Notes: generated by a model from the letters alone, not told the origin. A DNA stretch of 64,000 nucleotides from Octopus sinensis (GCF_006345805.1 NC_043014.1:24304001-24368000); one strand, 5' to 3'; numbered from the stretch's first letter, positions 1,901-37,335 are shown. A program made the numbers and translations.

Positions 1901-2420
1901 GTTAACAAAGGAGCTGAAGTCAGACCTACCACTTGAATAATTAGAATCAACAGTGGATCCATCATACATAAAATGGATATCCATACAGTCTCCATTGCTC
2001 AAATTCCACACATTGTTTTTTCATGATTCTTGTAGGAATGCTGAAATGTTGCAATATCAAAGTTAACCCAGTGAACTTTTGACAAAAAGTACTTTTTAAT
2101 ACTTTTTTATATGTTAACCAGAAGAGGTAAGGCAATGCCTCTAGCCTTTCAGGCCTCTCCCAGATTTGTGAGATTGATATGACTGAAATCTGTTGGTCAG
2201 TTTCAGCAAGAAACATTTTAGAGAAAGAAATATGTCTTCTTTTTTGCATCTTTCTCATTCTCTCATTTTGCTCATCCTCCTTCTTTCTGCCTCTCCACCA
2301 TTTTCTTCCCTCATACTGTAAATAAAATTCTAGTCTCTTCTCATTATCAAACTCACACATATCTTGCAAATCCACTTTTTGATTAATTTTATTGTTATGT
2401 TATGTTGTGTTGCATTGCAG

Positions 2421-2495
2421 GGCATTGAACTGGTGTTGGAGTTGATTGACTATTATTCCTTAAGAGTGGTACAGGCCTATATGAAACACATTCAG
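2421..2495 (+). CDS. OPLAH: 5-oxoprolinase (ATP-hydrolysing), internal coding exon (window exon 1)
   Basis: GIELVLELIDYYSLRVVQAYMKHIQ matches the hydantoinase B/oxoprolinase segment [25 protein letters not shown]; ttgcag acceptor, gtaag donor, phase 0. Upstream exons lie outside the window. Confidence 0.93.
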
Positions 2496-3278: not shown

Positions 3279-3332
<54 letters not shown>

Positions 3333-4504
3333 ATGTATGTATAATTGAAAAAATTGGATGAAAAAGAAGGGTTATGGTTGGATATTAATTTTTTAATTAC
3401 TACAATTGTTTCCATGCAACATAGTTCTCCAGATGTACAGATACTTGATTATGCAACTGTTTCCCCACATTATGAGATCTAGCTGTGTTTCCTCAGGTGA
3501 TATATAAATATCGTCTCCATAAGTTTATGATCCTTGGCTTCAAGAACATCCTCTCTGTCTGTCATGGCCTGAATTTAGTAGTAGCCACTAAGATTATCAG
3601 TGTGTGTTGTTGCTAAAGGGTCATTGGAAAACTGTTTTGAATGTGTAGGTGTAGGTGATGGTGATTCTAGCACTGTTAATGTAGTTGCGATTTTAAAGAG
3701 ATTGGCATTTTATTTCTTTGTACTGCTGATTTGCTCTTCATAGTAGGTTACACATGCAATTGTCCTTAGCTGACCTTTAAGATTCAATGCTCAGACACAT
3801 ATACACATGCACACTCACACACATACATATATATATATACACATGTGAATGTACATATGTGTGTGTCCAAGCATTGATTCTTAAAGAAGATAACCACTCT
3901 GAAATGCTTGTACCTCACAGTCTAGATAGGTGGTGCTGGAAACTGATTTAATTTAGGTATATTTACATTTGTCTACAGCGAAAAATTTTCCCCCATGACA
4001 AAACAGTGAAGGACTTGTTTACAAGTTGAAACGTACCACAACCATATGTGAACTGGTAATAACATTGTGTTAATATATGTATACATACATGCATACACAC
4101 ATACATATATATCTATACTCACTCACACATACTCATATATATAATGAATACTTATAAATATATATGCACATATATACATGTACATGCACACACACACACA
4201 TATCTGAATATACATGCATACAGCTATACATACATATAAACACACACATACACAATCATAGATATGTATATATATACACACACACGTATAAATATATGTA
4301 CATACATACACATACATAGATATGTGTATATTTATGTAAATAAAATAGAATGAAGTATTTAATAGACATGTATAAATGTGGATCAAATAAATAAATAAGG
4401 AAATGGGTGTAAAGTTTATGCATCTATATGTGCATATACATGTATGCATATACATATAAACATACATATATACACATACTCATGCATTTACAAATATATA
4501 TATA

Positions 4505-4624
4505 CAAGGCTTTGGTCGGCCCGAGACTATAGTAGAAGACACTGGCCCAGGTGCCACGCAGTGGGACTGAACCCGGAACCATGTGGTTGGTAAGCAAGCT
4601 ACTTACCACACAGCCACTCCTGCA

Positions 4625-4627
<3 letters not shown>
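4505..4627 (-). mobile_element. tRNA-SINE 5' head
   Basis: Closely similar to 22425-22546. Confidence 0.85.
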
Positions 4628-4682
<55 letters not shown>

Positions 4683-4764
4683 CATATGTGCAAATTTGTA
4701 TGTTTTGTTTTATGTATGTATTCTCATTCATAGAACTACATATAGTAGACATGCTCATATATAT

Positions 4765-5625
4765 ATTTCTTTACTACCCACAAGGGGCTACACACAGAGG
4801 GGACAAACAAGGACAGACAAAGGGATTAAGTCAATTATATCGACCCCAATGCGTAACTGGTACTTAAGAACCAGTTGGGTATCGTGGTGGATGTAAGCGA
4901 CTACGCTCTTCCCCTACAACTTCGGGCCCTGTGCCTGTAGCAGAAAAGATTATCTTTATTGGGAGGTGAGCTGGCAGAAACGTTAGCATGCTGGGCGAAA
5001 TGCCTAGCAGTATTTCGTCTGCCATTATGTTCTGAGTTCAAATTCCGCTGAGGTCAACTTTGCCTTTCATCCTTTCGGGGGTCGATTAATAAAGTACCAG
5101 TTACGCACTGGGGTCGTTGTAATCGACTTAATCCCTTTGTCTGTCCTTGCTTGTCTTCTCTGCGTTTAGCCCACTGTGGACAATAAAGAAATAAATACCT
5201 CTTCTTCTTCTCCTTCTTCCAATTCTTCTTCTTCTTCTTCTTTTCTTCTTCTTCTTTTTCTTCTTCTTTTTCTTCTTCTTCTTCTTTTTCTTCTTCTTTT
5301 TCTTCCTCTTCTCCTCCTCCTCCTTCTCCTTCTTCTTCGTCTTCTTCTTCGCATGCTGGGTGAAATTCTTAGTGATATTTCACCCGTTGCATTCTGAGTT
5401 CAAATTCCGTTGATGTCAACTTTGCCTTTCATCCTTTCGGGGGTCAATACAATAAGTACCAGTTACGCAATGGGCTCGATGTAATCGGCTCATCCCCACA
5501 TCCCCCACCCCAAGCTGCTCTTGTTGCAAAAATTTGAAATTATCATCATCATCATCATCATTGTTATTATTATCATCATCATCAAGTTGGAAAGCTGGCA
5601 GAATCATTAGCATGCCTGACGAAAT
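4765..5625. mobile_element. Cluster of second-family SINEs (MetaSINE-like core)
   Basis: GAGTTCAAATTC B box followed by tttgcctttcatcctttcgggg-tcgat..aagtaccag at 4960-5195(+) and 5350-5530(+); 3' half at 4765-4865(-); head at ~5590-5625; another fragment at ~34700-34840. The Meta-domain assignment is from recollection of the consensus. Confidence 0.7.
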
Positions 5626-6025
5626 GCTGGTGGTAGTGGTGGTGGTGGTGACGGTGGTGGTGCTGGGTGGTTGTGATGGTGGTGTTGGTGACGGTGGTGG
5701 TGGTGACTGCGGTGGTGGTGGTGCTGTGTGGTGTCGATGGTAGTTTTAGTGGTGGAGGTGGTGGTTGAGGTGGTGGTGATGGGTTGACCTTTATGTCAGG
5801 TCAGTCTCCAACACAAGGGCCACTTTGTATGGAGCACACCCATATCAATCTCTCTCTCCTTCTTCCCCGGCTCTCTCCCCCTCTCACCCCTCCATCCCTC
5901 ACTTATGCTCTATACATTCTCTATGCATTCACACACACCCGTACACACACACATTGAAACAGAAATACATATACCTAATATATTCATATACGCGTATATA
6001 TATACATATGTATATATACATATGC

Positions 6026-6067
<42 letters not shown>

Positions 6068-6185
6068 ATATATAGATTTATACATATGTATACATGTGTT
6101 TGTTTATATTATACATACACATCATGTATCGCTCTTTCTCTCTCTCATACTCTATCTATATACACATACATACATACATGCATAC

Positions 6186-6255
<70 letters not shown>

Positions 6256-6334
6256 ATATATATATATATACATACATATATATATATATACACACATACA
6301 TATATATATATATACATACATATATATATATATG

Positions 6335-6440
6335 ACTGGACTGGTGCAGCTTTCGGGCTCCCCAGACCCCAGTTGAACCGTCCAACCCATGCTAGCATGG
6401 AAAGCGGACGTTAAATGATGATGATGATGATGATGATGAT
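6335..6440 (+). mobile_element. Isolated RTE-type 3' tail
   Basis: ccgtccaacccatgctagcatggaaagcggacgttaaa(tga)n, same tail as 21300-21351. Related tails at ~33880-33980 (+) and ~41150-41290 (-). Confidence 0.75.
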
Positions 6441-6484
6441 ATATATATATATATATATATATACGTACATATATATATATACAC

Positions 6485-7689
6485 TAGCAGAATTGCCCGG
6501 CGTTGCTCGGGGCTGAATTGCTTGAAAGTACTGTTAATGATTGCACTGAATTATGATGATTATTCAGGCAAATATTGATATAAGCTTATGGTGAGAGATA
6601 AGGACTTAACGATCAAACGTGTGCCATTGCATTGTTTTGGGGGAACCAAATTTCTAATGAGCATTATAGGGGCACCAGCTTTAAGTTTGAGAAAGTGTGG
6701 TGGTAGTCCGGGGTGCTCAAAGGAATTGAGTACCTCTATTGGATAGTTGATGACGTCCTCTGGATCAGGAGTTGTATCGATAGACTGATATACATAGACT
6801 TCCCCAGGAATGAGTTTTAGCATTTCATCATTAATATGGTGAACAGTTTTATTCCTCGGGGCCAGTATAGCCTTTTTGCCAATCCATTCCATATTCTGAT
6901 AATTAGCTTGTAGATCTGGGAACACTGCATCTCTGAGATCAGAAGGCGTCTTAACAATGGTACAAATGGAATCGATGGCAATATTACCATTTTCATCCCC
7001 TGGTATTTTGCCTTCGCCAAGTGCAAGGAGGGTGTGAGGAAATGCTGCTGATGTGATATTACGTCGCATATGAGCACGCATATTGGTGTGAAGTTTGAGA
7101 GTTACTTCCGTTTATTTTTTAAAATATGCATTAAAATGGAAAAAAATGATGGTAAATTATTTGTAAAATCATAGACTCATCGTAGACGCGCGCTAATACC
7201 CAGAAGGGCTCGATATGAATGACGACTATAAGATACCCGGTTTTGGTTAAACTGCATCGCAAAATGTGGGAGTAGTTAGGAATCTAAATCGGAGTAGACA
7301 GACACACAACCTTTCTTTTATATATAAATATTTTCGTCCTAAAAAACTTTGTATAGAGTGAATGGTTACCTCTATGGAAATATATACACACACGTTATAC
7401 ATACATGTGTGCATAGATGAATATATAAATACATTTATATATCTATATACACTTTTGGGCGATCTCTGTGCTACTTAGAGATAACTTTAGATCTTATTTT
7501 CGTCCTAAAAGACTTTGTGCGGAGTGAATGGTTACGTGTATGGAAATATATACACACACATTATACATACATCTGTGTATAGATGAATATATAAATACAT
7601 TTAAATATCTATATACACTTTTGGGCGATTTTTCTGCTACTTGGATATAGGTCTTATATTCGTCCTAAAAATCTTTCCTGTCACACACT

Positions 7690-14851: not shown

Positions 14852-15993
14852 TAAAATTTTCTTGTTCTGTACTTTACCATATGTAATAAGTTGACCTGAA
14901 CTTTTCCAAGTGTAATAACTTGTCCTGTAATTTTCCAGGTTTATAATCTTAAGAATATTATTTCTCTTGCTCACATTTTTCCATGTGTATATATATATAT
15001 ATATTCGCATTTAATGACACTTATAGTTTTCCTTTTTGGTGAAGCTTTGCAAACTGCTGTCTACATTAATTTTATATATATAGATATATATAAATAATTG
15101 AGATTCAGTTGAATTAGATACTTACATTGAAGCGCCAAGTTAATGCGGTATTATCCGTACAACTCAAAGTAAGGTGAATAAAATCAAATTAAAATAAGCA
15201 ACAGGATATCAAGAGGTGATGCAGTATGACCGATTCAATAAATAAATAGAATGTTTTAATCAGTTAGACACATTAATATAATTTTACTCAAATTCTCTAA
15301 TAGAGCAAGAAGAGGGAGAAAGTCCATGTTGCTACTAATGTGACTTAGAATATATTACACTTCTAAGAACTGTATGAAGTTTGTTAGGGCCATAGCTTGT
15401 AAAGGATTGTGGTTCACTTTTATTAGCATCTTGCCCCTTTAAAGGGGCACAATCATTTACAAGCTATGACCCTTACAAACTTCATACAGTTCTTAGAAGT
15501 GTAGTATATTCTGAGTCACATTAATAGTAACATGGACTTTCTCCCTCTTCTTGCTCTATTAGAGAATTTGAGTAAAATTATATTAATATGTCTAACTGAT
15601 TAAAACATTCTATTTATTGATGCAACTGAGGATAGCCCTGTATTTAAACTGATGTAATGATTGCATTTTTCAATTAAATGGAGCCGCTTAATATCCTGTT
15701 GCTTATTTTAATATATACATATATAAATATATATATAAATTTAAATTTAACAATTAAGGATAACCTCTTAATAAGGAATCTTAAGAAATTATCAGGTAGA
15801 TAGCGTGAAAAACCTCATAAGAGAAAAATTTCGAAAATAATTCTTTCTTATTGAACATATTAATTTATATATAGAGGGCATTATTATACATACATGCCTC
15901 ACGCTAAGAGGGACATCAGTCATTTCTACCAAAACATTTTACTAATCATACCCAATGCAACTTTTCAAAGCAAGACATTTAAAAAATGAATTT

Positions 15994-16057
15994 AGTCTTG
16001 TATCACCTGTGATTTCGTACTTACCGCAGAATTGCGACCATACTCATCAGCAAGACT
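15994..16057 (-). ncRNA. Type I hammerhead ribozyme, copy 1
   Basis: Minus strand reads AGTCTTG-CTGATGA-GTA(tggtcgcaattctgcggtaag)TAC-GAAA-TCA(cagg)TGA-T-A-CAAGACT: 7-bp stem I, intact CUGAUGA and GAAA core, G10.1-C11.1 pair, stem III with A15.1-U16.1, AUA cleavage triplet (cut between 16001 and 16000). Confidence 0.88.
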
Positions 16058-16349
16058 GATTCTGAATATATCATAAATAAACGACCTGTACCGTTGAAGT
16101 CGAACAGCCATCTGCTCTCTTCCAACGAAGCACATGGAGAAGTTTACATATCATACATCCGGTAAATGGCGGGCTTCTTCGAATTGCATTTCGGATAGGA
16201 AAATTTTTTTCGGAATAAATTTAAATTTAACAATTAAGGATAACCTCTTAATAAGGAATCTTAACAAGAAATTATCAGGTAGATAGCGTGAAAAACCTCA
16301 TAAGAGAAAAATTTCGAAAATAATTCTTTCTTATTGAACATATTAATTT

Positions 16350-17162
16350 CTGATGTTCACAGCAAGTCAATATTTTTTTCTCTCCCTATCTTCCGTATCT
16401 CGCACAACTTACATACATTTGCCGCTAATCGTTTTTAAATGTTTGAACTTATACACTAACGAGCTTGCCTTCCCTATCTTATTCTTTCTCTACGAAATTT
16501 AATCCCTTAAGATACCCTCTATCTTTCTCTACGAAGTTTAATTCGATCTTCGCCACGCTTTCCCTATCTTTATCTTTCTCTACGAAGTTTAATTCGATCT
16601 TCGCCACGCTTTCCCTATCTTTATCTTTCTCTACGAAGTTTAATTCGATCTTCGCCACGCTTTCCCTATCTTTATCTTTCTCTACGAAGTTTAATCCGAT
16701 CTTCGCCATTCGCGGTATCTTCTTCAAAAACGAAATCGCCATTACCATTCCCAAATTCAAACTTCCTTCTTCTCCAAATCAGAGACTTCCGGTCAATCCA
16801 TCTAAAGGCACCTGGTCCCCGCCACCCCTATCATTCTTCCTGATCACTGATGTTCACAGCAAGTCAATATTTTTTTCTCTCCCTATCTTCCGTATCTCGC
16901 ACAACTTACATACATTTGCCGCTAATCATTTTTAAATGTTTGAACTTATACACTAACGAGCTTGCCTTCCCTATCTTATTCTTTCTCTACGAAATTTAAT
17001 CCCTTAAGGTACCCTCTATCTTTCTCTACGAAGTTTAATTCGATCTTCGCCATGCTTTCCCTATCTTTATCTTTCTCTACGAAGTTTAATTCGATCTTCG
17101 CCACGCTTTCCCTATCTTTATCTTTCTCTACGAAGTTTAATCCGATCTTCGCCATTCGCGGT
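16350..17162 (+). repeat. 497-bp tandem duplication with internal 51-bp minisatellite at the RTE 5' end
   Basis: Copies start at 16350 and 16847 (ORF offset 16465/16962 = 497); the 51-bp unit gives the 17-aa FSTKFNSIFATLSLSLS repeat; the second copy has one fewer unit. Confidence 0.9.
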
Positions 17163-20100
17163 GCTCCCGCCCTTTCCCACCCCCACCACCAATACCGGTG
17201 AACACTGTTCACACCATCTACACCGGATATTCCCTCCTCCCTCCTCCTCCACCACCATCACGTGTCTCTCCCTCCTACCCCTCCTCCTCACATGCTTTCA
17301 CTGTGTACTACACCTCCCCCCACCAAGACAAGCAACTAGCGCCACAGCTCATCAACCGCCCCACTGATCTTACGTTCCTCCTGTTTTGAATCTGTCACCG
17401 CCTCAACCGGCTATCTCCTTCCAGTCCCCCCCCTCGTGATATCCTATGTTTTTATCTCTTACGAACCTGTTCCAACCCCTCCCTGTCATCGTTCTTCCTT
17501 ACCCCAACCTTCCCTGCTGGTGCTTCCCTATATTACCTGCACCCCCCCACTTTCTCTCCCTCTCTTCTCACTGGTGGAACCTTTCTCAGCTGGACCCCCC
17601 CCCCCAACTCAACTCTAGAATATCTGTGTTTTTCCTCCTTCCTACACTGCCTAATTACGTTACTCAGTGACGATAACGCTTGCTTAGAATGCTAATTTCA
17701 ATAATTTCAGCCTTTCTGCCACATCTACATCATCAATGACCTTAACGCTTATGCCTACAACACTGCTAACACCAGCTCCTGCCCACGGCAGGTCCACAAT
17801 CTTAACATGCCTACAATGCTTGAATGTTGTCAGGTCGGAAGAGAGATCAGAAGAAAAATGCCACGGAAACCATCACCACCACAACAACCCTCTTCTTCTC
17901 AGGCACTGAATTGCCCCCCTCCCCCCCATATCTCCTTCCCAGTTTTCAGAGTTGGCACTATCAATATTGGTACATTGAAAGGCAGGTCTAGTGAGATTGT
18001 AGAGATGCTAGAGAGAAGACAGGTTGATCTATGCTGCATACAAGAGGTAAGATGGAGAGGTGCTTCAGCTAGGGTCCTCACAGGCAAGGCACTTAGGTAC
18101 AAACTCTTCTGGCAAGGTAACATGGAAGGTGTAGGGGGTGTAGGCATTCTCCTTGCGGAGAAATGGGTGGATAAGGTCATAGAGGTTGTCAGGGTTTGCG
18201 ATAGAGTGCTCAAGCTCAGGTTGGTCCTACAGAGTGGCACAGCTACGATTATCTCCGCCTATGCCCCACAAGCGGGACTACCAAATGATTTGTGGGTGGA
18301 GATTTTAATGGGCATGTTGGGCGGGAATCGGGTATCTTCACTGGGGTACACGGTGGCCATGGTATTGGCACCAGAAATGATGAGGGAACTAGACTGCTGG
18401 AATTCTGTGATGCATGTAACCTTTCAATCTGCAACACTAACTTCAAGAAGCCTGACTGCCACCTTATAACCTATCAGTCAGGAGACTCCGCTAGCCAAAT
18501 AGACTTCATCCTCACCAGACAGCGGGATGCAGGGTCACTCTTGAATACAAAGACCCTCCCGGGTGAAGAATGTATCCCTCAGCATAGACTAATCATCAGT
18601 GACTTTAAGCTTGAGGCCAGAAGGACTCCAAGAAACAAACCAATCCAGAAAAGAAGGATTTGGAGGCTAAAGAACCCTTCACATGGTCAGAAATTTAGGG
18701 ACATACTCATCAAGAAATTTGATGAGAGGGAGGAGGAGCTCCAGACGTCAGACATAGAAGGTAGCTGGGAATTCCTACAGGACAGCTTGCTGAGTGCCAC
18801 AGACCGAGTCTGTGGATGGTGCAAAGTCCCTTCCAGACCTAGAGTTACGTGGTGGTGGAATAGTGCAGTAGATAAAGCCATTAGTGCAAAGAGACGGGCC
18901 TGGAGGGATGGGGGCAGCAGGGAACTGTACCAGGCAGCCAAAAGGGAGGCTGGGCGGCAGGTATACATAGCCAAAGATGTAGCAGAAAAGAAGAAGTTTG
19001 CCAATGTCCAGCGACGTGAGGACCAAAGAGCTGAGGTATTTCGGATTGCCAGACAGTGTGTCAGAGAAAATAGTGATGTTACAGGAGAGAAATGTGTCCG
19101 CGTGGATGATGGGGCACTTGCTTTTACTGTTAGTGAAAAGAAAGAGGCTTGGAGAAGCCATTACGAAAGACTGCTGAACGAGGAGAATGAATGGGAGGAG
19201 GAGAGCCTGCCAACTGTTGACCCAGTAGAGGGACTAGCTACCCGAATAGACAGCTCCCTTGTAGATAAGGCAATTAAGGATATGAAACCAGGCAAAGCCC
19301 CTGGCCCATCAGGAATCACTGCTGAGATGCTTAAAACAGCTGCCTATGTGGGCTATGGCATAGTCACCCGCATTGTAAACCAGGTAGTTCACAATGGAGT
19401 CATACCCAATGACTGGCGTAGCAGCACCATAGTCAACTGCTACAAGGGTAAGGGTGATGCTCTAGATAGAAATAATTACAGGGGTATCAAACTGTTGGAC
19501 CAGGTGATGAAGGTCACAGAGAGGGTCATAACCCATCTCATTAGGGAGAGAATTTGCTTAGATGAAATGCAGTTCGGTTTTGTGCCAGGTAGAAGCACCA
19601 CTGATGCTATATTCCTGGTCCGACAACTGCAGAAGTACCTAGCTAAAGATAAACCCCTCTACATAGCCTTTGTGGACTTGGAGAAAGCCTTTGACAGGGT
19701 TCCCTGTTCCCTTATCTGGTGGTCGATGCGGAAACTGGAGATTGACGAATGGCTAATAAGGGCTGTACAGGCTCTATACAGAGAGGCTGCCAGCAAGGTT
19801 AGGATTGGCAACGAATATAGTGAAGAATTCCGGGTAGAAGTAGGTGTGCACCAGGGCTCAGCCCTCAGTCCCCTTCTATTCATCATAGTCCTCCAGGCAA
19901 TAACAGAGGAATTCAAAACAGGATGCCCCTGGGAGCTCCTCTATGCTGATGACCTGGCTCTCATAGCAGAATCACTACCGGAACTAGAAAAGAAATTTCA
20001 GGTGTGGAAGCAAGGGTTAGAATCAAAGGGCCTTAGAGTAAATGTAGCAAAGACCAAAGTAATAGTAAGCAGCAAGGCGTACTCAGCACACACCCCCTCG

Positions 20101-21351
20101 GGTAGGTGGCCCTGCTCAATCTGTAGGAAAGGTGCAGGTAGAAACTCCATAAGATGCACCCAATGTAAGCTATGGACGCACAAGAGGTGCAGCAACATTA
20201 AAGGGAAATTAACAGATAAGATAGCTTTCATGTGCGGCAGATGCACAGGGACAATAGACACCACAGACACTCAGAAAACAGATTCCATCACACTCCAGGG
20301 AGAGAAACTAGAAGTAGTTGATAGTTTCCGCTACCTGGGTGACCAAGTTAGTAGCGGAGGTGGATGCACAGAGAGTATCACCACTAGAATACGAATAGCC
20401 TGGGCAAAGTTCAGAAAGCTCCTACCCCTACTGGCGAAAAAGGGTCTCTCCCTCAGAGTGAAAGGTAGACTGTATGATGCATGTGTGCGAACTGCCATGC
20501 TTCACGGTAATGAAACATGGGCTATGACTGCAGAGGACATGCGTAGACTTGAAAGAAATGAAGCTAGCATGATCCGCTGGATATGTAATGTCAGTGTGCA
20601 CGCACGACAGAGTGTAAGCATCCTGAGAGAAATGCTGGATATAAGAAGCATCAGATGTGGTGTGCAAGAGCGACGCTTGCGATGGTATGGTCATGTGCTG
20701 CGGATGGATGAGGAGAGATGTGTGAAGAAGTGCCACTCCCAAACAGTTGAAGGTATCAGGGGGAGAGGTAGACCCAGGAAGACATGGGATGAGGCAGTCG
20801 AGCATGACCTCAGAACGTTGGGCCTCACTGAGGCAATGGCGAAGGACCGAGATCTCTGGAGATATGCTATGACTGCAAAGACCCGGGCTGCTTCCTGCAT
20901 CAGTTCCGCATAGCCCCTGCCCATTCAAAGTACCCCGGATCCCAGATTGTCCCGCTGTGCTTGAGGAGACCTGTTGAGTCAAGTACATGAACACTCCGAA
21001 CACCCCTCCCCACTGGTGCTCCCCTATATTTCTGCACCCTCCCCCCCACATAAAAAGCACCATCCGAACGTGGCCGATGCCAGCACTGCCCCGACTGGCT
21101 TCTGTGCAGGTGGCACATAAAAAGCACCAACCGACCGTGGCCGATGCCAGACCCCTCTGGCACCTGTGCAGGTGGCACGTAAGAAGCACCCACTACACTC
21201 GCGGAGTGGTTGGTGTTATGAAGGGCATCCAGCTGTAGAAACACTGCCAGACCAGACTGGAGCCTGGGGCAGCCCCTGACTCCCCAGACCCCGGTCGAAA
21301 CCGTCCAACCCGTGCTAGCGCGGAAAACGGACGTTAAACGATGATGATGAT
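16350..21351 (+). mobile_element. Near-full-length RTE-clade LINE, defective
   Basis: APE (GTINIGTL, CCIQEVRW, GDFNGH, SQIDFIL) in ORFs 17807-18469 and 18292-20913, joined by a deletion/frameshift near 18282; RT (GVHQGS, LLYADD, FRYLG); 3' tail ...ggacgttaaac(gat)n. Junctions show 7 bp of target (atatata) deleted and no TSD. Confidence 0.93.
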
Positions 21352-21471
21352 GAGGGCATTATTATACATACATGCCTCACGCTAAGAGGGACATCAGTCA
21401 TTTCTACCAAAAAATTTTACTAATCATACCCAATGCAACTTTTCAAAGCAAGACATTTAAAAAATGAATTT

Positions 21472-21535
21472 AGTCTTGTATCACCTGTGATTTCGTACTT
21501 ACCGCAGAATTGCGACCATACTCATCAGCAAGACT
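21472..21535 (-). ncRNA. Type I hammerhead ribozyme, copy 2
   Basis: Identical to 15994-16057 at offset 5478; predicted cut between 21479 and 21478. Confidence 0.88.
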
Positions 21536-21889
21536 GATTCTGAATATATCATAAATAAACGACCTGTACCGTCGAAGTCGAACAGCCATCTGCTCTCTTC
21601 CAACGAAGCACATGGAGAAGTTTACATATTATACATCCGGTAAATGGCGGGCTTCTTCGAATTGCATTTCGGATAGGAAAATTTTTTTCGGAATAAATTT
21701 AAATTTAACAATTAAGGATAACCTCTTAATAAGGAATCTTAACAAGAAATTATCAGGTAGATAGCGTGAAAAACCTCGTAAGAGAAAAATTTCGAAAATA
21801 GTTCTTTCTTATTGAACATATTAATTTATATATAGAGGGCATTATTATACATACATGCCTCACGCTAAGAGGGACATCAGTCATTTCTA

Positions 21890-21929
<40 letters not shown>

Positions 21930-22546: not shown

Positions 22547-23413
22547 ATATATATATAATGATAAATCTCAGAGCGAGTTATAAACAGTAGCAGCAACACA
22601 TCGTGACGTATATTTGCCATTTGAATATGGCTAACCCCTAAGGGTGGATGCTACTGTAGTTTGTAGCCCCAGGAGGACACCTCCTCCAGCTGGCTATAGA
22701 CACACTTTCTGTGCCCTATATATATATATATGGTGTGCTATGTGAATTTATGGAAAGGTATCCCATAGAACTTAACAAATTTGTTGAGTTCTATGGGATA
22801 CCTTTCCATAAATTCACATAACACACCACATACAAGTATTATTTTCATATCTACCATCAAAATATGAAGAATCTTTATTAGAAATCAGTTTTTGGAATCC
22901 TCCAAAATAAAAAAGAAGAAATATAATTCAACCTTTTCACACACACACATACACATATATACTTGGAAATTGATGTGACGCATTCAATTAAATAATAAAT
23001 AATATATATATAAATTATTTATTATACACACACACACACACACACCATATCATCTTAAAAAAGGGCACATCGAATAATGTAGTCCTAGATACACTATGTC
23101 TGGTAAAAAAAATGGTTGCAACTGAGATACTTTTGATCGAAGGTTTCTTGTATCAGTGCTGTTCTCTAGGTTAAACAATCACAGTATGTACTTTTTTTTA
23201 AATATTCATCCAGAAAGGAACTTGAAAGAGTTGCAAATAGTCCTTTATTGATCAAAGTGAGTGGTGTATGATAGAATTGAATTAACCAGACCAAATGCTA
23301 AGCAACAACTAGTGCTATTAGATATCTTCTAACTGCTATTAGATGTCTTCTTAACTTTTTTGTTTTCTCCTTTATTTAAATTCCATTTGTGTGTGTTCTG
23401 CTTCCTCTTACAG

Positions 23414-23560
23414 AAAAATGCTGAAATTGCTGTCAGTGATATGCTTCATTCTATTGCCAAAGAGACAAGAAAACGTACTGGAAGCACTCAGCTGTTTGCT
23501 GAGGACTTTATGGATGATGGGTCATGTATTCGACTGCGAGTTAATATAAATGAGAGCAAG
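23414..23560 (+). CDS. OPLAH: 5-oxoprolinase exon 2
   Basis: KNAEIAVSDMLHSIAKETRKRTGSTQLFAEDFMDDGSCIRLRVNINESK (NAExAVxDML, EDxMDDGS motifs); ttacag/gtttgt; 147 nt; follows a 20,918-bp intron. Confidence 0.93.
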
Positions 23561-24822: not shown

Positions 24823-24957
24823 GGGACAGCAGTATTTGACTTCACTGGCACAACACACCAGGTACATGGCAACTGTAATGCTCCCCGGGCCATAACACTA
24901 TCAGCACTCATCTACTGTCTCCGCTGTATGGTTGGTCATAACATTCCATTGAATCAG
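24823..24957 (+). CDS. OPLAH: 5-oxoprolinase exon 3
   Basis: [45 protein letters not shown]; tttcag/gtaagg; 135 nt. Confidence 0.96.
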
Positions 24958-25516
24958 GTAAGGAAACAATTCTATAAAGAAACAACAGCTAAGGGGTATG
25001 TCCTGTTAACCCCCTTTTTTAAAAGCTTCTTTTTGTTATTATATGAGCATTTTTTAGAACCATAAATCTATCCTCAAATACTGTTCACACCCTATATTTA
25101 CTTTGTTCATGGTATTTTTATGTTTTTATTTAGCACTTTTTATGCATGTATGTATCTGTGTGCGTTTATATGAGTATATATGTCTCTATAAAAATGTGTA
25201 TATGCCGTGTGTGGACATGTGTGTGTGTGTGTACACTATGCTTGTATAATAAATACATGTGTGACTGTATCAGTATGTAGATTTGCTGGCATGTATGTTT
25301 GCACTTAAGTTTTATGGCACCATTTCACTCCAAAATGATCACCAAAACAATTTCTTTACTCTTGATCTACTTAATTCTCCTTTCCCCCTTTTTTTATATA
25401 CACATATGTGTATGTGCATGTATGTATGAATATATGTGCATGGATACATATGTATGTGTTTTTTTGTTTCTGTGTGTGTGTATATGTATATAAATATGTG
25501 TGTGCATGTTTATGTG

Positions 25517-25547
<31 letters not shown>

Positions 25548-25759
25548 GTGTGTATGCATGTTTATATAGGTGTATGTTTGTAGTTAAATTGCCTTACTTA
25601 CACAATAGACAACAAACTCTAAAATGTCAGTTTCAAAACTGCATTTAAGTGAGAAACTCCTGTCAGAGTCACCTTTTGTAAACACCTAATATCCTATAGA
25701 CATCTAATTATTAAAGTAGAAAAATTATCAGAAAAGCCATTTCTATTCATATTTTCATG

Positions 25760-25990
25760 TGTGTATAGGTAGTCTTGCCAAATATGTCTGGCATTTAAAA
25801 GAAAATGATACTCGTCCTTTCAATATCAGCTGGTTGATCTTTGAGAAAGCCACACCATATATGCACAGAGCATATAGATGCCTTATGAGATGCAACTTGT
25901 TCTTGACCAAAAAACTTTTTATGCTGTTCCAGGATAAATATGCATTGAACCAAAGACAGGAGCTTTTGAATTCCTGTAGACAGGTATAAA
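25760..25990 (+). mobile_element. Penelope-like GIY-YIG C-terminal remnant
   Basis: LAKYVWHLKEN..FNISW.IFEKA.PY...CNL.LT.K...LNQRQELLNSCR. Confidence 0.7.
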
Positions 25991-26246
25991 TTGTTGTCTG
26001 ATAAAATACCATATAGATGATAATAATAATATTTAACTTTCGCATTTGATTTTGTCTTTACCACCTAAAGGCAGGCATCATTTTGTATAATCTTGCCGTT
26101 ACTTGTTACATTTTTCAACCTTCAAGAAAACCTTTGACTGTTTACTAACTGTTCCTTTTAAATGCACCTTTTTGAGTCATTTGATTGTTACAGTGCAATT
26201 TAGCCCATTATGAAGTTGGTGGGTTCCCTCTGACAAATATCAAGGA

Positions 26247-26618
26247 GTGATGTTTGTAGAGGCCACAGCCCATGGAGAATTATCCCATAGATTTAGGAAA
26301 GCTCTGAAGGAGACCAGACTCAACATTAAGATTGCTGAAAGGCCAGGAAACTCTTTCAGATCACAACTATGTAGGATGTACCCCTTTGAGAATACCATAT
26401 GCACTAATGATAACTTAATGGTATGTAGGATTAACCCTGGCATTAACTGTAGAACTAGAAATGTAGTCTACAGCATAAGATGCATAGGTGCTTCTAAAGA
26501 CATGAACATGACATACATAGGGGAGACATCTAGGAGCATTATGGAAAAACTAAATGAACATTTGAGACTATATGACAACAAAAATCAGTCCTCCATATTC
26601 TACAGTGAGAGGAAGTAG
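26247..26618 (+). mobile_element. Penelope-like (Neptune-type) GIY-YIG remnant
   Basis: NCRTRNVVYSIRC...TYIGETSRSI.E..NEH, preceded by a Cys-containing linker. Confidence 0.75.
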
Positions 26619-28062
26619 AACAGTCTATAATTGCTGGAGGCAGCCTGGGTCAACTTGACATCTGCATTTTATCCAAGCACCCAAAGGACCTAACCCTCAG
26701 ACAAATACAGAAGTAAGTCCTCATAAATGAAACATCCCCAGTTCTAAATAGTAAATATACATAAGAAGTGATCATACCCCATACCCACAGTTTATATTTA
26801 TATACAGATAGAATATTTAGTGGGCTGTTATGTAGATGTGTGTGTGTGTATATGCACATGTATGTAGGCAAATGGATATGAATGTAAACAGATAGACATA
26901 CAGACGGGTAGGTACATAGGTTATATAAAGAGACAAGCACACATACTCACACACATAAGCAAATGAAGACTGAAACACATGACCATACACACACACTTCA
27001 CTTCACATAAGGAGACACACATCCATACATACAGACACAGTACATAGTTACAAAAGCCCATACACACACACACACACACACACACACTCAAATATGCACA
27101 CACAAGGAGACAGAGATACACACACGCACATATACAAACACACATACATACATAAAAACACATAAACACAAACACATGAATATGCAGAATACATACAAAA
27201 AGGTTGCAAGGCACAATGAACATTTTAGGAAAAATAAATAAGTAAATGAGTGGAAATCAAACTGGTGTGTGTATTAAATAATAAGGCACTAAAAGAGAAT
27301 GACTCTCCCCAGAGACAACAAAATATGCTTCAACACACAAGCTCACATAAAGAATCTTGCAAACCAAATCCAAAAACGAAATACATACACACACACAGAT
27401 GCCCATTTTTCCACCCTGAAGACAGGGACCAGTCTTACGATAATGTTTATATGCATCCACCACTGGTTGCATATCAATGATCTTTTGCATACTCCATCTC
27501 CCAACTTTTCAACTATTAGGTAATTCCAGAAACAGCTGTGAGACCATGATGTCACCTCTTAGTTTTTTTGTATTTCTTGTACTCCGTGTAAATTTGTTCT
27601 GTAAATATATGAATATCTATATGCTTATACACGAATGTTCATCTTCTGAATATTTTCAGTTTTTGTTTCTCTCTATATATATCCCTGTATATTAAGATGT
27701 ACATATGTATGTATATTTCATATTTTATATATCAAGCCCAAGTGTGTTTTCTATCCACTCATTGTAGACTACAAATAAAATATTTGTCAATCATTCTAAT
27801 CATCTTGTTATCTATATAGCTCTTTGTCTATCTTTCAATCTTTCCATTTTCTCTCTCTCACCCTCTCTTTCTCTCTCTCAGTTTGTAAATTCTGTTACGT
27901 TTGTATACCATTATGGGCAAAGACCTTCATTATAGAAAATTGTTTTTAATCTTTACTAGCAGAGATACCTGACGTTGCCCGGTTACATTCAATAGAAGAA
28001 TTAGATTTTTCTGTTATATATATATATATGGATACACACACACACACACACAAATATATGTA

Positions 28063-30189: not shown

Positions 30190-31880
30190 GGCTGTTGAGA
30201 TTATAACACCTCGTTGTAAACAATGTTTCTTGTTTTTCCTTGTGGAGCATATACAAAAAGGTTTCTTTTGGTTCCTACTCTTGAGCAGCAAACATACAGT
30301 TGCCTATGCGAGAAGCAGGGCTCTTTCAAGAGAAGACCAGCTACAGAGAGGGTTTGACCCTGAGATTTGTTAATGGACATGGCAAAGCTGATACGAAGGG
30401 GGATTGCAGTCTTCTGAATGTAAATGAAATTTCTGCTCCTGATGGAGTAAGAGGAAATCTTGGAATGAAGACGTCATCACCTTTTCCACATCCAGAAAGA
30501 ATGATCGCCTCGATAACGTGTGATATCATTTTCTTTATCACCAGTCGTGTTCCATTGCAAATCTTGGTGGTCCCAGATTGCGGAGTAGCATTACAGGAGT
30601 TCCAACTTTAAGTGGTAATATGTGTGGAGGTAGTCGAGGAGGCTCCAGTGAATTGAGAAATTCAGGAGGATAGTTCACAACTTCATTTATATCTGGAATT
30701 GTATCAACAGACTTTTAAGTGTGTATAGTGCCGGGAAGAGAATGCATTAGCTGTTGATTACTTTTGTTAACAGCGACGTTTTTTGGAGCTAATATTGCTC
30801 TTTCACACAGCCAATTGTGATTTTGGTAGTTTTGTGTGAAGTTGGGAAAGACTTTGTTTTTGAGGTCATCTACAGAATTAACAACAGAGGAAAATGACCA
30901 CACTTCCATTTGTCCTGCAGCATCAAGAGGCATCTTGCCTTCACCAAGTGTCAAAAGGTCCTGTGCAAACTTTGTGGACAATTTGTCGCCGTGTAGCTGA
31001 GCTCTCATGTTAGTGTTGAGACTAAAGATTGTAACATGATGCCACAGGGTAGAGGACTTTAGGCATGCTTGAACTTCATCAGCTCTAGTGCCTTTCGGAA
31101 TGACAGGAAGCATTTGCCTGAAATCACCTGACAACAGAAGCGTTACACCTACCATTGGAGCCTGACAGTCTCGGATGTCTTTCAGGGCTCTATCTAATGC
31201 TTCCAAAGCTCCCTTGTGAGCCATAGTGCACTCATCCCAGACAATTAGATGACACATTTTAAGTACTTGTCCCTGATCTGAGCTTTTGTTGATGTTGCAT
31301 GAAGGCATTTCGGATGCTGCTAAATTGAGAGGGAGTTTAAAAGTTGAGTGTGCTGTCCTGCCACCAGGTAACAAAGTAGCTGCAATGCCAGTGGAGGCTA
31401 CAGCTACTGCAATGTCCTGATGCTACCTAACTTCTGCAAGGAGAAGCTTTGTAATAAATGTTTTTCCTGTCCCTCCAGGAGCATCGAGGAAGAAGATTCG
31501 TCCCTCGCGTTGGCGTACACTGTTAAGAATAGTTCTGTAGGCCTGCAGCTGGTCCGGAAGTAATTTAGGCTCATTTTCAACAATGTACTTTGAAAGCGCT
31601 TGAGTGTCATAGGTTGTTTCACGAATGACAACAGTGGGAAGGCTATTTGACCCTGACCTGAATGCTTGTGGCAGGCCATACGTCGACAATTCATTTCCAT
31701 CCACTTTAGCAATTCTGTCTTCAACGTCAATGAGTGTTTTGTTATAGATTTCATTGCTGATACCCTCCATGTCAGGATAGAGTAGTTGAGCTTGGCGCTG
31801 AAACGGACAATGTTTTTGAGATTCCGGTTCGAATGTAAGGCAGGTTTGAAAGTGTTCCCAACAGTTATTAGTTGTAGTGA
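30190..31880 (-). pseudogene. Helitron RepHel PIF1 helicase pseudogene
   Basis: Walker A LDAPGGTGKTF, in-frame TAG, ASTGIAATLLPGGRTAHS, LIVWDE, GDFRQ, AILAPKN, then frameshifted VFIPR...FRRLQ and CFSHRQLYVCCSRV; a Helitron 5' end at 32363 lies upstream beyond a SINE. Confidence 0.9.
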
Positions 31881-32661
31881 TAGAGTGTTTATGCCGAATA
31901 TGTACGTATGCATGTATATATATGTATGTATGCCTGTATATATGTACAAAATCCACTGAGAAGGCTTTTGTTGGTCTGAAGCTACAGCAGAAGACACATG
32001 CCAAGTCACCACACAGTGGGATTGAACCCAGGACCATGTGTTTGGAACGTAGTTTGTTACCACACAGCCACACCTGCCCCTATGTGTGTGTGTGTGTGTA
32101 TGCGTATGTGTGTATGGGTAGATATATTATGCATGTATATATGTGTACATATTACATGTACATCTATATATATACATATACACATAAAATACAAAATACA
32201 AAGTTATATCTTGATATCGCTAGTGATAACAATACTCAAAATATATAACAGACTGGAATTGTAGGCCCGTCTCTTGCAATTTTGATCAATTTTTATATTT
32301 TAGAATTGTATTAAAAAGGAACATGGGAACAGGCAGAGAAAATCTGCCTTTTATCATAAGAGATAGGAGCACTGAGTATATAGTTCTGTTTTCTAACATA
32401 TGACCTTACTCAGTCATCAGTACTTCTGTTTCTATTACAAGCTTATCAGATTTCAAGAAGTGATTTTTGCCAATGCATAATAATGCTAATTTTCTCATTA
32501 GTTTGTCAGTTTCTGCTTCTCAAGATGTCTGCTTATCTATATGTCTTTCTATCTTTACCTAAATAGATGGCTTGCCTGCTCATCAGTGTGATAAGCTATC
32601 ATTAACTCATGTTATTTTAAAACCCATATGATATTTTACAAATTGTTTAATACCATTACAG

Positions 32662-32811
32662 GGCTGCCTGGTACCAGTGAAGACAATCATACCCAAAGGT
32701 AGTATTCTTGACCCATCAGAAACAGCTGCAGTTGTTGGTGGTAATGTCCTCACCTCCCAGAGAATTGTAGATGTCATTCTAAAAGCTTTTCAAATATGTG
32801 CTGCTTCTCAG
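32662..32811 (+). CDS. OPLAH: 5-oxoprolinase exon 4
   Basis: Manual translation [50 protein letters not shown]; ttacag/gtaact; 150 nt; not in the ORF track. Confidence 0.96.
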
Positions 32812-33378: not shown

Positions 33379-33453
33379 GGTTGTATGAACAACATAACGT
33401 TTGGAGACCAAGACATAGGGTACTACGAAACAATTGCTGGAGGTGCTGGGGCT
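33379..33453 (+). CDS. OPLAH: 5-oxoprolinase exon 5
   Basis: [25 protein letters not shown]; ttcaag/gtgagt; 75 nt. Confidence 0.96.
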
Positions 33454-36283: not shown

Positions 36284-36366
36284 GGTCCAGGCTGGAATGG
36301 TCGAAGTGGAATCCACACCCATATGACTAACACAAGGATTACTGATCCAGAGATTCTAGAACGTAG
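36284..36366 (+). CDS. OPLAH: 5-oxoprolinase exon 6
   Basis: GPGWNGRSGIHTHMTNTRITDPEILER+AG; gtttag/gtaagc; 83 nt, phase 2 end. Confidence 0.96.
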
Positions 36367-37335
36367 GTAAGCCATATGTCAGTTTTTTAATCTTTTATTC
36401 CAAGAGGGAAAGACAATGCTCGTGACCCTTTATTTTTTCAGGACTTGCAAGACTGGTTGGTATTGTTTTATATGAATTAAAGCCCTTTGCACCCTATGGA
36501 GCATTGACCATCAACTACTTTTCTTAACTATTCTTGACTTTAGGTTGTCTTCACTTGCATCCCTGCTTTTTCCTTGAAGCTTCCTTTTGGATTTTGCTGC
36601 ACCACATCACATGTATCCTTGAAGGAATGCCTTCCTTTTCCCAGGTTGTGTTGGTTTTGAATTGTCATTGATGCTTCTTTAACTTTGCTTTTTTCTAAGT
36701 AGGGGTATTAATTTTATGCAAACCCATTTTTACCTCTGGCAAGAGGTGGTCCATATTAGTCTGGTTTCTTTTGTTTAATCTGTCCAGGGAGGCCCTACCA
36801 GGAATTTCACTCCATTGGTATAACTCCCAAGATCATTAAAGCACATGAGCTATGATACCACAACAAAAATTAGACATTTTGGTGGCAGATTAGCTGGAGC
36901 AGGTGAGTTATTCTGAAATCAGAGACCTTACCTGAATGTTTGTGACAGAGTGCTAAAAGCATCCAAGGAGAAGCTGATGGTGTTAAACAGAGTGATGGAT
37001 TTAAGTCTAGCACTCAAGAACTCAGAACACAAAGAGACAACAAATACTGCAAGGTATTTCCCAAGATGCTCTAACAATTGTACAAATCCACTACTTTATT
37101 TTAATCAATTCTGATAGGATTGATTAAAATAAGTTGACCCTAGCAGAATTTGAACTGGAAAAAAGTCCTGCAGAACTTTAGCAGCTCTACCAATTTGGTT
37201 CCATCCATTCTTTTTCAATCCTCTAACCTTAACATATATTTAATAAATCCTCCAACATATTTGGTAACCCTCCTACAAATCTGGTAATCTTCCAACGGAT
37301 CTGATAACCCATACAGATTTGCTAACACTCCAACA

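What the first reader, a model, noticed from the sequence alone, without database searches (positions are those of the whole stretch)
15735..21892. Retrozyme-like ~483-bp tandem repeat with two identical, intact type I hammerhead ribozymes
Seen: a ~483-bp unit repeated ~2.4 times between (TA)n tracts. Each complete unit folds on the minus strand into a full type I hammerhead: 7-bp stem I extendable by GAAT/ATTC past a 1x2 loop, CUGAUGA, G-C-closed stem II, GAAA, 4-bp stem III, AUA cut site. Established: tandem short repeats with one type I hammerhead per unit define metazoan non-LTR retrozymes, which release monomer RNAs that circularise. Inference: this is an octopod retrozyme family whose uninterrupted arrays would give ~483-nt circular RNAs. 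No ORF exists, so it would be invisible to gene annotation. I cannot tell whether this family has been described.
Basis: partly seen in the sequence, partly recalled or inferred. Interest (0 to 1): 0.92.

Follow-up and report, generated by a model that had tools for sequence, protein, structure and literature searches.

The report
Hammerhead-ribozyme tandem repeat, split by a LINE
A 483-bp non-coding repeat carrying a well-formed self-cleaving hammerhead ribozyme sits 2.4 times in a (TA)n tract inside an intron of the 5-oxoprolinase gene. It looks like one LINE-disrupted copy of the known "retrozyme" class of animal circular-RNA mobile elements: a new member, not a new kind.

Summary
A 483-bp unit is present about 2.4 times between 15735 and 21892, with 97.5-99% identity between copies. 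It is bounded by TA-rich tracts. Its minus strand carries two identical type I hammerhead motifs, at 16057-15994 and 21535-21472.

A motif of this quality is expected 4e-5 times per window by chance. Rfam's Hammerhead_1 model aligns it end to end but scores only 16.5 bits against a gathering score of 34.

- Unit 2 is split by a 5.0-kb LINE (endonuclease, reverse transcriptase, PHD finger) on the opposite strand. The two cut sites are therefore 5,478 nt apart, and this locus cannot release a 483-nt monomer.
- The stem III hairpin is marginal (-0.6 kcal/mol). Folding predicts that neighbouring units share an extended helix III, the double-hammerhead arrangement usual for animal tandem-repeat hammerheads.
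- The array lies antisense in a 20.9-kb intron of a 5-oxoprolinase gene.

The anatomy fits metazoan non-LTR retrozymes. Genomic copy number, RNA circles, cleavage and the octopod origin could not be tested, because no collection at hand holds this genome. Verdict: a probable new member of a known kind, of moderate interest.

The parts
15710..15734 (.). Imperfect TA-rich tract at the left edge of the array (the 3' side in ribozyme orientation)
   Evidence: Read directly from the sequence. Homology to the unit starts at about 15733-15735.
15735..16217 (-). Repeat unit 1, the only complete and uninterrupted 483-bp copy
   Evidence: Self-BLAST and alignment of the copies. GC content is 33%. The longest open frame is 62 codons.
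15988..16062 (-). Hammerhead 1. The parts in order are: GAAU/AUUC extension, 1x2 loop, 7-bp stem I, CUGAUGA, stem II (4 bp, a 2x3 internal loop, 5 bp, loop AUUC), GAAA, helix III strand AUCACAGGUGAU, A17. The cut falls between 16001 and 16000.
   Evidence: Descriptor scan, helix probabilities, and a full-length Rfam Hammerhead_1 alignment at 16.5 bits.
16218..16349 (-). Unit 2, the part left of the LINE insertion
   Evidence: It shares a 3-nt indel with unit 3 that unit 1 lacks.
16350..21351 (+). LINE inserted into unit 2; not part of the repeat. It has a tandemly duplicated 5' region with 51-bp repeats, a frame-broken APE domain (17807-18469), an RT+PHD ORF (18292-20913), and a (GAT)n tail. 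7-9 bp of the target (TATATAT, plus up to two further bases identical to the LINE's tail) were lost at the insertion site.
   Evidence: Pfam hits Exo_endo_phos, RVT_1 and PHD; repeats; junctions read against unit 1.
21352..21697 (-). Unit 2, the part right of the LINE. It contains hammerhead 2.
21466..21540 (-). Hammerhead 2, identical to hammerhead 1. The cut falls between 21479 and 21478, which is 5,478 nt upstream of cut 1 on the minus strand.
21698..21892 (-). Unit 3, a partial copy of 195 bp at the 5' end of the array in ribozyme orientation. It has no hammerhead.
21893..21924 (.). Pure (AT)16 tract at the right edge of the array
   Evidence: Tandem Repeats Finder and the sequence itself.
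2418..2495 (+). Host 5-oxoprolinase exon upstream of the intron that holds the array
   Evidence: tblastn with 5-oxoprolinase fragments P0183 and P0198, where this stretch adjoins the next exon in the query.
23408..23551 (+). Next host 5-oxoprolinase exon. The array is therefore intronic and antisense to the host gene.
   Evidence: tblastn hits from about 30 proteins. Later exons lie at about 24823-24957, 32662-32811 and 33382-33456.

Best explanation
This is one genomic insertion of a non-autonomous, non-coding tandem-repeat retroelement of the retrozyme type. It is now disabled.

Proposed life cycle:
1. An intact array is transcribed on the ribozyme strand into a multimeric RNA. (Inferred.)
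2. Each unit's type I hammerhead cuts after A17 in the AUA|C context. (Inferred from the motif.)
3. The unit's own stem III hairpin is very weak. The catalytic fold is therefore predicted to form between neighbouring units, which share an extended helix III of 5 bp, a tandem A-G/G-A mismatch and 5 bp, with core and cut site contributed by different copies. This is a double hammerhead, so cutting would be favoured in multimers and suppressed in the released monomer. (The fold is computed here; the activity is inferred.)
4. The 483-nt monomers, which carry 5'-OH and 2',3'-cyclic phosphate ends, are closed into circles by a host tRNA-type ligase. (From the literature, not shown here.)
5. A circle or multimer is copied more than once around by the reverse transcriptase of an autonomous element, most likely a Penelope-like element. 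The copy is integrated at a nick in a (TA)n tract, giving a head-to-tail array with arbitrary end points. (Inferred.)

At this locus a 2.4-unit array landed in a (TA)n tract, antisense in an intron of the 5-oxoprolinase gene. A LINE later inserted into unit 2 and pushed the two ribozymes 5.5 kb apart. Antisense transcription would now give a 5,478-nt fragment rather than a 483-nt monomer.
For: - Motif: exactly two hits in 128 kb of strand, both inside the repeat, with every conserved core position present. It meets the published filter CUGANGA / GAAAY / RUH (filter wording). The chance expectation is 3.9e-5 per window.
- Rfam Hammerhead_1 aligns across all 45 model positions in register.
- Stems I and II have pairing probabilities above 0.8-0.9.
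- Two copies co-fold into the double hammerhead at -45.6 kcal/mol, against 2 x -18.9 for separate monomers. The helix III duplex is -13.2 kcal/mol, against -0.6 for the hairpin.
- In a 643-nt model tandem transcript the helix III between adjacent units has probability 0.87-0.98, against less than 0.01 for the hairpin. The minimum-energy fold contains a complete hammerhead built from two adjacent units.
- The array is head-to-tail, has 33% GC, has no ORF over 62 codons and has no protein relatives.
- TA-rich tracts lie on both sides. The literature reports (TA)n as a preferred target of some Penelope-like elements, which leaves target duplications indiscernible (PMC8557442).
- The ribozyme-strand circle folds better than dinucleotide shuffles (z = -3.7), while the other strand does not stand out (z = -1.5).
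- Animal type I hammerheads in tandem repeats are known to have weak helix III and to act as dimers (PMC4209133; PMC7229834).
Against: - Only one locus exists in the window. Sensitive nhmmer and BLAST searches find no diverged copy.
- No copy was found in any collection at hand, though none of them holds this genome.
- The two ribozymes are identical, so there is no covariation evidence.
- Rfam scores lie far below the gathering thresholds.
- The canonical monomer fold is 2.1 kcal/mol above the minimum-energy fold, and its stem III has probability 0.03.
- The z-score is not exceptional. 8 of 56 background strand-segments reach it, all at four loci where both strands score low (DNA-level inverted repeats); none of the other 48 do.
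- The AUA cut triplet and the 27-nt stem II are unusual for animal hammerheads.
- No cleavage, expression or circle data exist.
Confidence: 0.68

Rival explanations
1. The unit is the terminal repeat (pLTR) region of an autonomous Penelope-like element. This array would then be a solo or internally deleted remnant of such an element, not a separate non-autonomous family that lives through small circular RNAs.
For: - Penelope-like elements carry hammerheads in their pLTRs and form partial tandems (PMC4209133; PMC8557442).
- A 2026 preprint places animal retrozymes as sister to pLTRs.
- The element targets (TA)n, as some Penelope-like elements do.
- A probable Penelope-type GIY-YIG remnant lies 4.3 kb away at 26214-26615.
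Against: - There is no RT or GIY-YIG coding sequence in or next to the array. The only ORF between units is an APE-type LINE on the opposite strand.
- The GIY-YIG remnant is on the other strand, lies beyond two host exons, and shares no sequence with the unit.
- The hammerhead has the 'canonical' layout: stem I is 7 bp to loop 1 and stem II is 4 bp to an internal loop. It does not have the minimal layout reported for pLTR ribozymes, which is a short helix I and a 7-8 bp helix II.
Confidence: 0.17
2. This is a purely local tandem duplication (a minisatellite) of intronic DNA that happens to contain a hammerhead-like sequence. It would have no ribozyme activity and no mobility.
For: - It is a single locus.
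- Rfam scores are below threshold.
- For stem lengths alone, about 1.5 such motifs per 2.5-Gb genome are expected by chance.
- The monomer stem III is unstable.
Against: - The expectation per window is 3.9e-5. None of 3e6 simulated contexts pass once the G10.1-C11.1 pair is required.
- Several features are not needed for a chance match: the 4-bp extension of stem I, the second 5-bp helix in stem II, and the self-complementary helix III that yields a double hammerhead only when units are tandem.
- The array is bounded by TA-rich tracts on both sides, as expected of an insertion.
Confidence: 0.1
3. It is a hammerhead-bearing short element mobilised by a LINE, that is, a SINE-like element such as the schistosome Sm-alpha repeat. 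It would not depend on a Penelope-like element or on a circular RNA.
For: LINEs are abundant in the window. From my own knowledge, a SINE-like hammerhead repeat is known in schistosomes.
Against: - The unit shares no tail or other sequence with any LINE in the window.
- It has no poly-A or LINE-type microsatellite tail at the 3' end of the ribozyme strand.
- A more-than-unit tandem structure is not what LINE-mediated SINE insertion gives.
Confidence: 0.05

Closest known systems
Metazoan non-LTR retrozymes, e.g. the Mytilus galloprovincialis 350-390 bp repeats (Cervera and de la Pena 2020, PMC7229834)
   Same: Both are head-to-tail AT-rich non-coding repeats of a few hundred bp, with one type I hammerhead per unit and no LTRs. 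The unit RNA is predicted to be self-paired.
   Different: - The unit is longer: 483 bp against the 170-400 nt reported in 2020, though within the 51-972 bp range of the 2026 preprint.
- The ribozyme shares only the catalytic core with the mussel one, whose sequence is in the supplement.
- Stem II is 27 nt with an internal loop, and the cut triplet is AUA rather than GUC.
- Copy number and RNA circles are not shown here.
Amphibian retrozymes: the axolotl repeats (PMC7229834) and, by my own recollection, newt satellite 2. Both have dimer-dependent hammerheads.
   Same: A weak helix III means the ribozyme is predicted to act as a double hammerhead between neighbouring units of a multimeric transcript.
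   Different: Helix III here has 4-5 potential hairpin pairs rather than 1-2. There is no sequence similarity, and the host lineage differs.
Hammerheads in the pLTRs of Penelope-like elements (Cervera and de la Pena 2014, PMC4209133)
   Same: Both are type I topology hammerheads in tandemly arranged retroelement repeats. Insertion into microsatellites is also shared.
   Different: No RT/GIY-YIG ORF is associated with this array. The pLTR ribozymes are 'minimal', with helix I of 4-5 bp, helix II of 7-8 bp and almost no helix III, whereas this one has the canonical helix I / loop 1 / helix II layout.
Cave-cricket pDo500 satellite, roughly 500-bp units with a hammerhead (my own recollection, not checked here)
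   Same: A unit of about 500 bp in tandem, with one hammerhead per unit.
   Different: That is a long satellite array in an insect. This is a 2.4-unit interspersed array in an intron.
Plant LTR retrozymes (PMC4918200)
   Same: Both are non-autonomous, use hammerhead-processed RNA, and are proposed to have a circular RNA intermediate.
   Different: The plant elements have type III hammerheads inside LTRs, plus a PBS, a PPT and 4-bp target duplications. None of these is seen here.

Membership tests
Hammerhead ribozyme, type I | Conserved core: CUGANGA, GAAA, U16.1 and H17 (the published filter is CUGANGA / GAAAY / RUH) | tested here: met
   The sequence reads CUGAUGA ... GAAA-U ... A-U-A|C in both copies. 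The filter wording comes from the PMC7229834 supplement.
Hammerhead ribozyme, type I | Three helices around the core with the open end at helix I, plus the G10.1-C11.1 and A15.1-U16.1 pairs | tested here: met
   Stem I is 7 bp plus a 4-bp extension. Stem II is 4+5 bp and G-C closed. Helix III is A-U plus 3-4 pairs. The stem III hairpin itself is weak, with probability 0.03.
Hammerhead ribozyme, type I | Score at or above the Rfam gathering threshold (RF00163, 34 bits) | tested here: not met
   There is no hit at gathering thresholds. The full-length alignment scores 16.5 bits with E = 0.13 in a 121-nt search. The alignment shows larger insertions than the model in stems II and III and AUA in place of GUC, which probably account for the shortfall.
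Hammerhead ribozyme, type I | Compensatory changes in the helices among homologues | tested here: inconclusive
   The two copies are identical over 111 nt. No other homologue could be retrieved.
Hammerhead ribozyme, type I | Mg2+-dependent site-specific self-cleavage | not testable with these tools
   This needs an in vitro transcription and cleavage assay.
Metazoan non-LTR retrozyme | Head-to-tail repeats of a few hundred bp, each with a type I hammerhead | tested here: met
   There are 2.4 units of 483 bp, and both units that include the ribozyme region carry it. Published size ranges are 150-450 bp and 51-972 bp.
Metazoan non-LTR retrozyme | Non-coding, no LTRs, low GC (below 50%) | tested here: met
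   The longest open frame is 62 codons, with no protein relatives. The array ends are not repeats of each other beyond the unit itself. GC is 33%. PBS and PPT motifs were not searched for specifically.
Metazoan non-LTR retrozyme | Many dispersed copies in the genome | not testable with these tools
   There is one locus in the 64-kb window. The protein, metagenome, viral and prokaryote collections do not hold this genome: the best host-gene identity is 81% and the best LINE identity is 53%. All searches for the unit were negative.
Metazoan non-LTR retrozyme | Target-site duplication, longer than 4 bp when present | tested here: inconclusive
   TA-rich tracts lie on both sides, so no discrete duplication can be delimited. 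The same difficulty is reported for (TA)n-targeting Penelope-like elements.
Metazoan non-LTR retrozyme | Highly self-paired unit RNA | tested here: inconclusive
   The circular fold is -115.9 kcal/mol with 67% of bases paired and z = -3.7 on the ribozyme strand, against z = -1.5 on the other strand. 8 of 56 background segments reach that z, all at four loci where both strands score low.
Metazoan non-LTR retrozyme | [quoted passage not shown] | not testable with these tools
   No RNA data are available. At this locus the cut sites are 5,478 nt apart, so any circles would have to come from other, intact arrays.
Metazoan non-LTR retrozyme | Co-occurrence with autonomous Penelope-like elements in the same genome | tested here: inconclusive
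   The ORF at 26214-26615 has a GIY-YIG-like motif (Pfam E = 0.015, below the cut-off). It has 816 relatives, and in several 800-1050 aa proteins the match sits at the C-terminus. Only one of the seven long relatives examined shows a weak RVT_1 hit.
Penelope-like element pLTR | The direct repeats flank an RT plus GIY-YIG ORF in the same orientation as the hammerhead | tested here: not met
   The sequence between the units is a LINE with APE, RVT_1 and PHD domains on the opposite strand. No GIY-YIG or Penelope-type RT lies within the array.

The most novel reading that the evidence does not exclude
This is the first glimpse of a cephalopod (if the source really is an octopod) retrozyme family. 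Its circles would be unusually long at 483 nt. Its hammerhead would have an extended, internally looped stem II and an AUA cut site, and would be active only as a double hammerhead between tandem units. The family would be mobilised by a (TA)n-targeting Penelope-like clade such as Naiad, which itself lacks hammerheads. That would mean the ribozyme repeat parasitises a ribozyme-less autonomous element rather than deriving from its terminal repeats.
Probability: 0.12. Interest if true: 0.6.

Novelty: new member of a known kind. Interest (0 to 1): 0.33.

Why it matters
If the unit is multi-copy and expressed, it would extend hammerhead-processed circular RNAs to a lineage for which the searchable literature reports none. 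It would also supply a natural hammerhead variant with a long stem II, an AUA site and obligate pairing between units.

The practical points are these:
- Such elements are invisible to gene annotation and to Rfam at curated thresholds, so they need descriptor-based searches.
- The (TA)n insertion site links the element to the targeting behaviour described for some Penelope-like elements.

As it stands, this is one broken copy of a class already known across invertebrates, so its value is mainly as a seed for a genome-wide search.

Tried and rejected
**Searches for further copies (all negative)**
- Rfam at gathering thresholds on the whole window found nothing. In E-value mode the only hits were weak: RAGATH-1-hammerhead at 17.6 bits and Hammerhead_1 at 16.5 bits. 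The snoRNA-like hits are noise.
- I joined all open frames of the unit of 33 or more codons into one pseudo-protein and searched the 5.8-billion protein collection, hoping that gene callers had made ORFs on other copies. There were no hits.
- I searched with the LINE ORF and with the host 5-oxoprolinase exons, to identify the species and reach its genome. The best identities were 53% and 81%, so the genome is not in the collection and no neighbouring loci could be fetched.
- Pattern scans for the ribozyme found nothing: metagenome contigs twice, viral contigs once, prokaryote genome contigs once. None of these collections is expected to hold animal DNA.
- nhmmer at maximum sensitivity and BLAST found no diverged copies in the rest of the window.
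- Literature searches for the ribozyme sequence, and for hammerhead or retrozyme together with octopus or cephalopod, found nothing relevant.

**Hypotheses rejected or weakened**
- pLTR hypothesis for this locus: rejected, because the intervening ORF is an APE-type LINE on the other strand.
- Fold stability as strong evidence: weakened by the background control.
- GIY-YIG ORF as a proven Penelope-like element: not settled. Pfam is weak and there is no PDB match.

Full report
**What is there**

A self-BLAST of the proposed unit shows one complete 483-bp copy at 15735-16217. A second copy is split into 16215-16349 and 21352-21695. A third, partial copy lies at 21693-21892. Identity is 97.5-99%. 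An alignment of the copies shows five substitutions and one 3-nt indel among them, none in the ribozyme region.

The array is bounded on the left by an imperfect TA-rich tract (about 15710-15734) and on the right by a pure (AT)16 (21892-21924). Tandem Repeats Finder does not report the array because unit 2 is interrupted by 5.0 kb.

**The ribozyme**

On the minus strand each unit that includes this region reads:

GAAU-C-AGUCUUG-CUGAUGA-[GUAU GG UCGCA AUUC UGCGG UAA GUAC]-GAAA-UCACAGGUGA-U-A|CAAGACU-AA-AUUC

My own descriptor requires CUGAUGA, a closed stem II, GAAA, a stem III that starts with A-U, a non-G base at the cut, and stem I. Run on both strands of the window, it finds exactly two hits, 16057-15994 and 21535-21472. 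They are identical over 111 nt. The cuts fall between 16001|16000 and 21479|21478.

The motif also satisfies the published filter CUGANGA / GAAAY / RUH (supplement of PMC7229834). Simulation with the window's dinucleotide statistics gives 3.9e-5 chance hits per window for the observed stem lengths, or about 1.5 per 2.5-Gb genome. None of 3e6 contexts pass when the G10.1-C11.1 pair is also required. The extra 4-bp extension of stem I and the second helix of stem II are not counted in that estimate.

Rfam does not call the motif at curated thresholds. The Hammerhead_1 model aligns over all 45 positions in register, but scores 16.5 bits against a gathering score of 34. The alignment shows 23-nt and 8-nt insertions in stems II and III where the model has 10 and 4, and AUA in place of GUC, which probably account for the shortfall.

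**How it would fold**

In an 83-nt context, stems I and II have pairing probabilities of 0.8-0.99. The stem III hairpin has only 0.03, and the canonical monomer fold (-16.8 kcal/mol) lies 2.1 kcal/mol above the minimum-energy fold.

Taken alone, the helix III segment gives a hairpin of -0.6 kcal/mol but a duplex between two copies of -13.2 kcal/mol. That duplex is 5 bp, a tandem A-G/G-A mismatch, and 5 bp. Two copies co-fold into the double hammerhead at -45.6 kcal/mol, against 2 x -18.9 for separate monomers.

In a 643-nt model transcript across two adjacent units, the helix III between units has probability 0.87-0.98 and the hairpin less than 0.01. The minimum-energy fold contains a complete hammerhead whose core, stem II and GAAA come from the downstream unit, and whose cut site and 3' strand of stem I come from the upstream unit.

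This is the behaviour described for most animal type I hammerheads in tandem repeats (PMC4209133) and for the amphibian retrozymes, which need to act as dimers (PMC7229834 abstract).

**The unit as an RNA**

The 483-nt monomer has 33% GC. As a circle on the ribozyme strand it folds to -115.9 kcal/mol, with 67% of bases paired and z = -3.7 against 200 dinucleotide shuffles. The opposite strand gives z = -1.5.

A control on 28 random 483-nt segments of the window, both strands, shows 8 of 56 strand-segments at or below -3.7. All 8 come from four loci where both strands score low, which points to DNA-level inverted repeats (one of them, at about 29.3-29.6 kb, is a confirmed palindrome). None of the other 48 reach it. 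I treat this as weak support only.

The unit has no open frame longer than 62 codons. Its six-frame products have no relatives among 5.8 billion proteins.

**What interrupts it**

The 5.0-kb insert at 16350-21351 is a LINE on the plus strand. Its features are:
- a 5' region duplicated in tandem, with 51-bp repeats;
- a frame-broken APE endonuclease at 17807-18469;
- an 873-codon ORF with RVT_1 and a PHD finger;
- a (GAT)n tail.

Compared with unit 1, 7-9 bp of the target (TATATAT, plus up to two further bases identical to the LINE's tail) are missing at the junction.

The insert is not a Penelope-like element and it lies antisense to the ribozyme. The array is therefore not the terminal repeat of the element it encloses. 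The consequence is that the two cut sites are 5,478 nt apart, so this locus cannot yield a 483-nt monomer.

**Where it sits**

tblastn with 5-oxoprolinase fragments maps plus-strand exons at 2418-2495, 23408-23551, about 24823-24957, 32662-32811, 33382-33456, about 36263-36367 and 43438-43590. The array therefore lies in the 20.9-kb intron between 2495 and 23408, antisense to the host gene. Host pre-mRNA would carry the complement of the ribozyme, not the ribozyme itself.

**Looking for relatives**

No other copy, even a diverged one, exists in the window. No collection at hand holds this genome. The nearest LINE and 5-oxoprolinase proteins are 53% and 81% identical. Pattern scans of metagenome, viral and prokaryote contigs found nothing.

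Copy number, covariation, the empty site and the 'octopod' attribution therefore remain untested. The searchable literature holds no report of a hammerhead or retrozyme in cephalopods, and none of this sequence.

**Comparison with what is known**

Metazoan non-LTR retrozymes are defined as short tandem repeats, each carrying a type I hammerhead. [quoted passage not shown] A 2026 preprint gives consensus lengths of 51-972 bp and places these elements next to the pLTRs of Penelope-like elements.

Some Penelope-like elements prefer (TA)n targets, which hides target duplications. Naiad elements, which are present in Octopus species, do this and lack hammerheads (PMC8557442).

The features testable here are met: the tandem arrangement, the ribozyme, no coding capacity, low GC and microsatellite flanks. 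Those that define an active family are untestable with these tools: copy number, RNA circles and cleavage.

A possible Penelope-type endonuclease remnant lies at 26214-26615, but its identity is not settled.

**Verdict**

The most likely reading is one disrupted insertion of a retrozyme-type hammerhead repeat (0.68). The rivals are:
- a solo pLTR-derived remnant of a Penelope-like element (0.17);
- a local duplication with a fortuitous motif (0.10);
- a LINE-mobilised SINE-like element (0.05).

It is a new member of a known kind, and interest is moderate to low. Its main use is as a query for a genome-wide search.

Noticed in passing
window 2418-2495, 23408-23551, ~24823-24957, 32662-32811, 33382-33456, ~36263-36367, 43438-43590 (+): Exons of a 5-oxoprolinase (OPLAH-like, Hydantoinase_B) gene run along the plus strand. 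The introns are long and full of transposable elements and microsatellites. The best external protein identity is only 81%, so the species is not in the protein collection.
   Followed up: partly
window 26214-26615 (+), also 25720-25986 (+): An ORF has a Cys-rich stretch followed by a GIY-YIG-like motif (VVYSIRC...TYIGETSRS...EH). Pfam GIY-YIG gives E = 0.015. It has 816 relatives in the representative library, some of 800-1050 aa with the match at the C-terminus, and one of those has a weak RVT_1 hit. It is probably a Penelope-like endonuclease remnant, flanked by CA/TA microsatellites.
   Followed up: partly
window 16350-21351 (+): A LINE with APE, RT and an internal PHD finger. Its 5' region is duplicated in tandem (16350-16846 against 16847 onward) and contains 51-bp repeats (16520-16708, 17017-17155). 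A 67-bp repeat lies in the 3' UTR (21047-21190), followed by a (GAT)n tail. The APE frame is broken near 18290, and 7-9 bp of the target are lost rather than duplicated.
   Followed up: partly
window 60273-62973 (+); fragments 45647-48111 (-), 50400-51076: Further copies and fragments of the same APE-RT-PHD LINE type. Matches to its 3' UTR also occur at about 43096-43393, 44554-44856, 46620-47039 and 63192-64000.
   Followed up: no
window 57035-59683 (+): A different LINE-type element, with RVT_1 followed by a zf-RVT domain, split into two frames.
   Followed up: no
window 6563-7111 (-) and 30718-32126 (-): PIF1-like helicase fragments (Pif1_2B and PIF1 domains), possibly Helitron-derived.
   Followed up: no
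window 15238-15411/15448-15621; 21914-21984/21993-22063; 29306-29424/29446-29564: Three long, nearly perfect palindromes with arms of 174, 71 and 119 nt (94-95% complementary). The right-hand and 29.3-kb ones directly abut TA-rich microsatellites; the left-hand one ends about 90 bp from the array's TA-rich tract. Two of them bracket the hammerhead array (about 113 bp to its left, and directly after the (AT)16 on its right). They are foldback or MITE-like, share no sequence with the repeat unit, and have no evident relation to it.
   Followed up: partly
whole window, e.g. 1-1200, 3280-3320, 4430-4900, 5780-6480, 25400-25560, 26830-27400: The window has a very high density of TA, CA and mixed microsatellites. 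These give many spurious long ORFs rich in Y, I, H, T and C.
   Followed up: no
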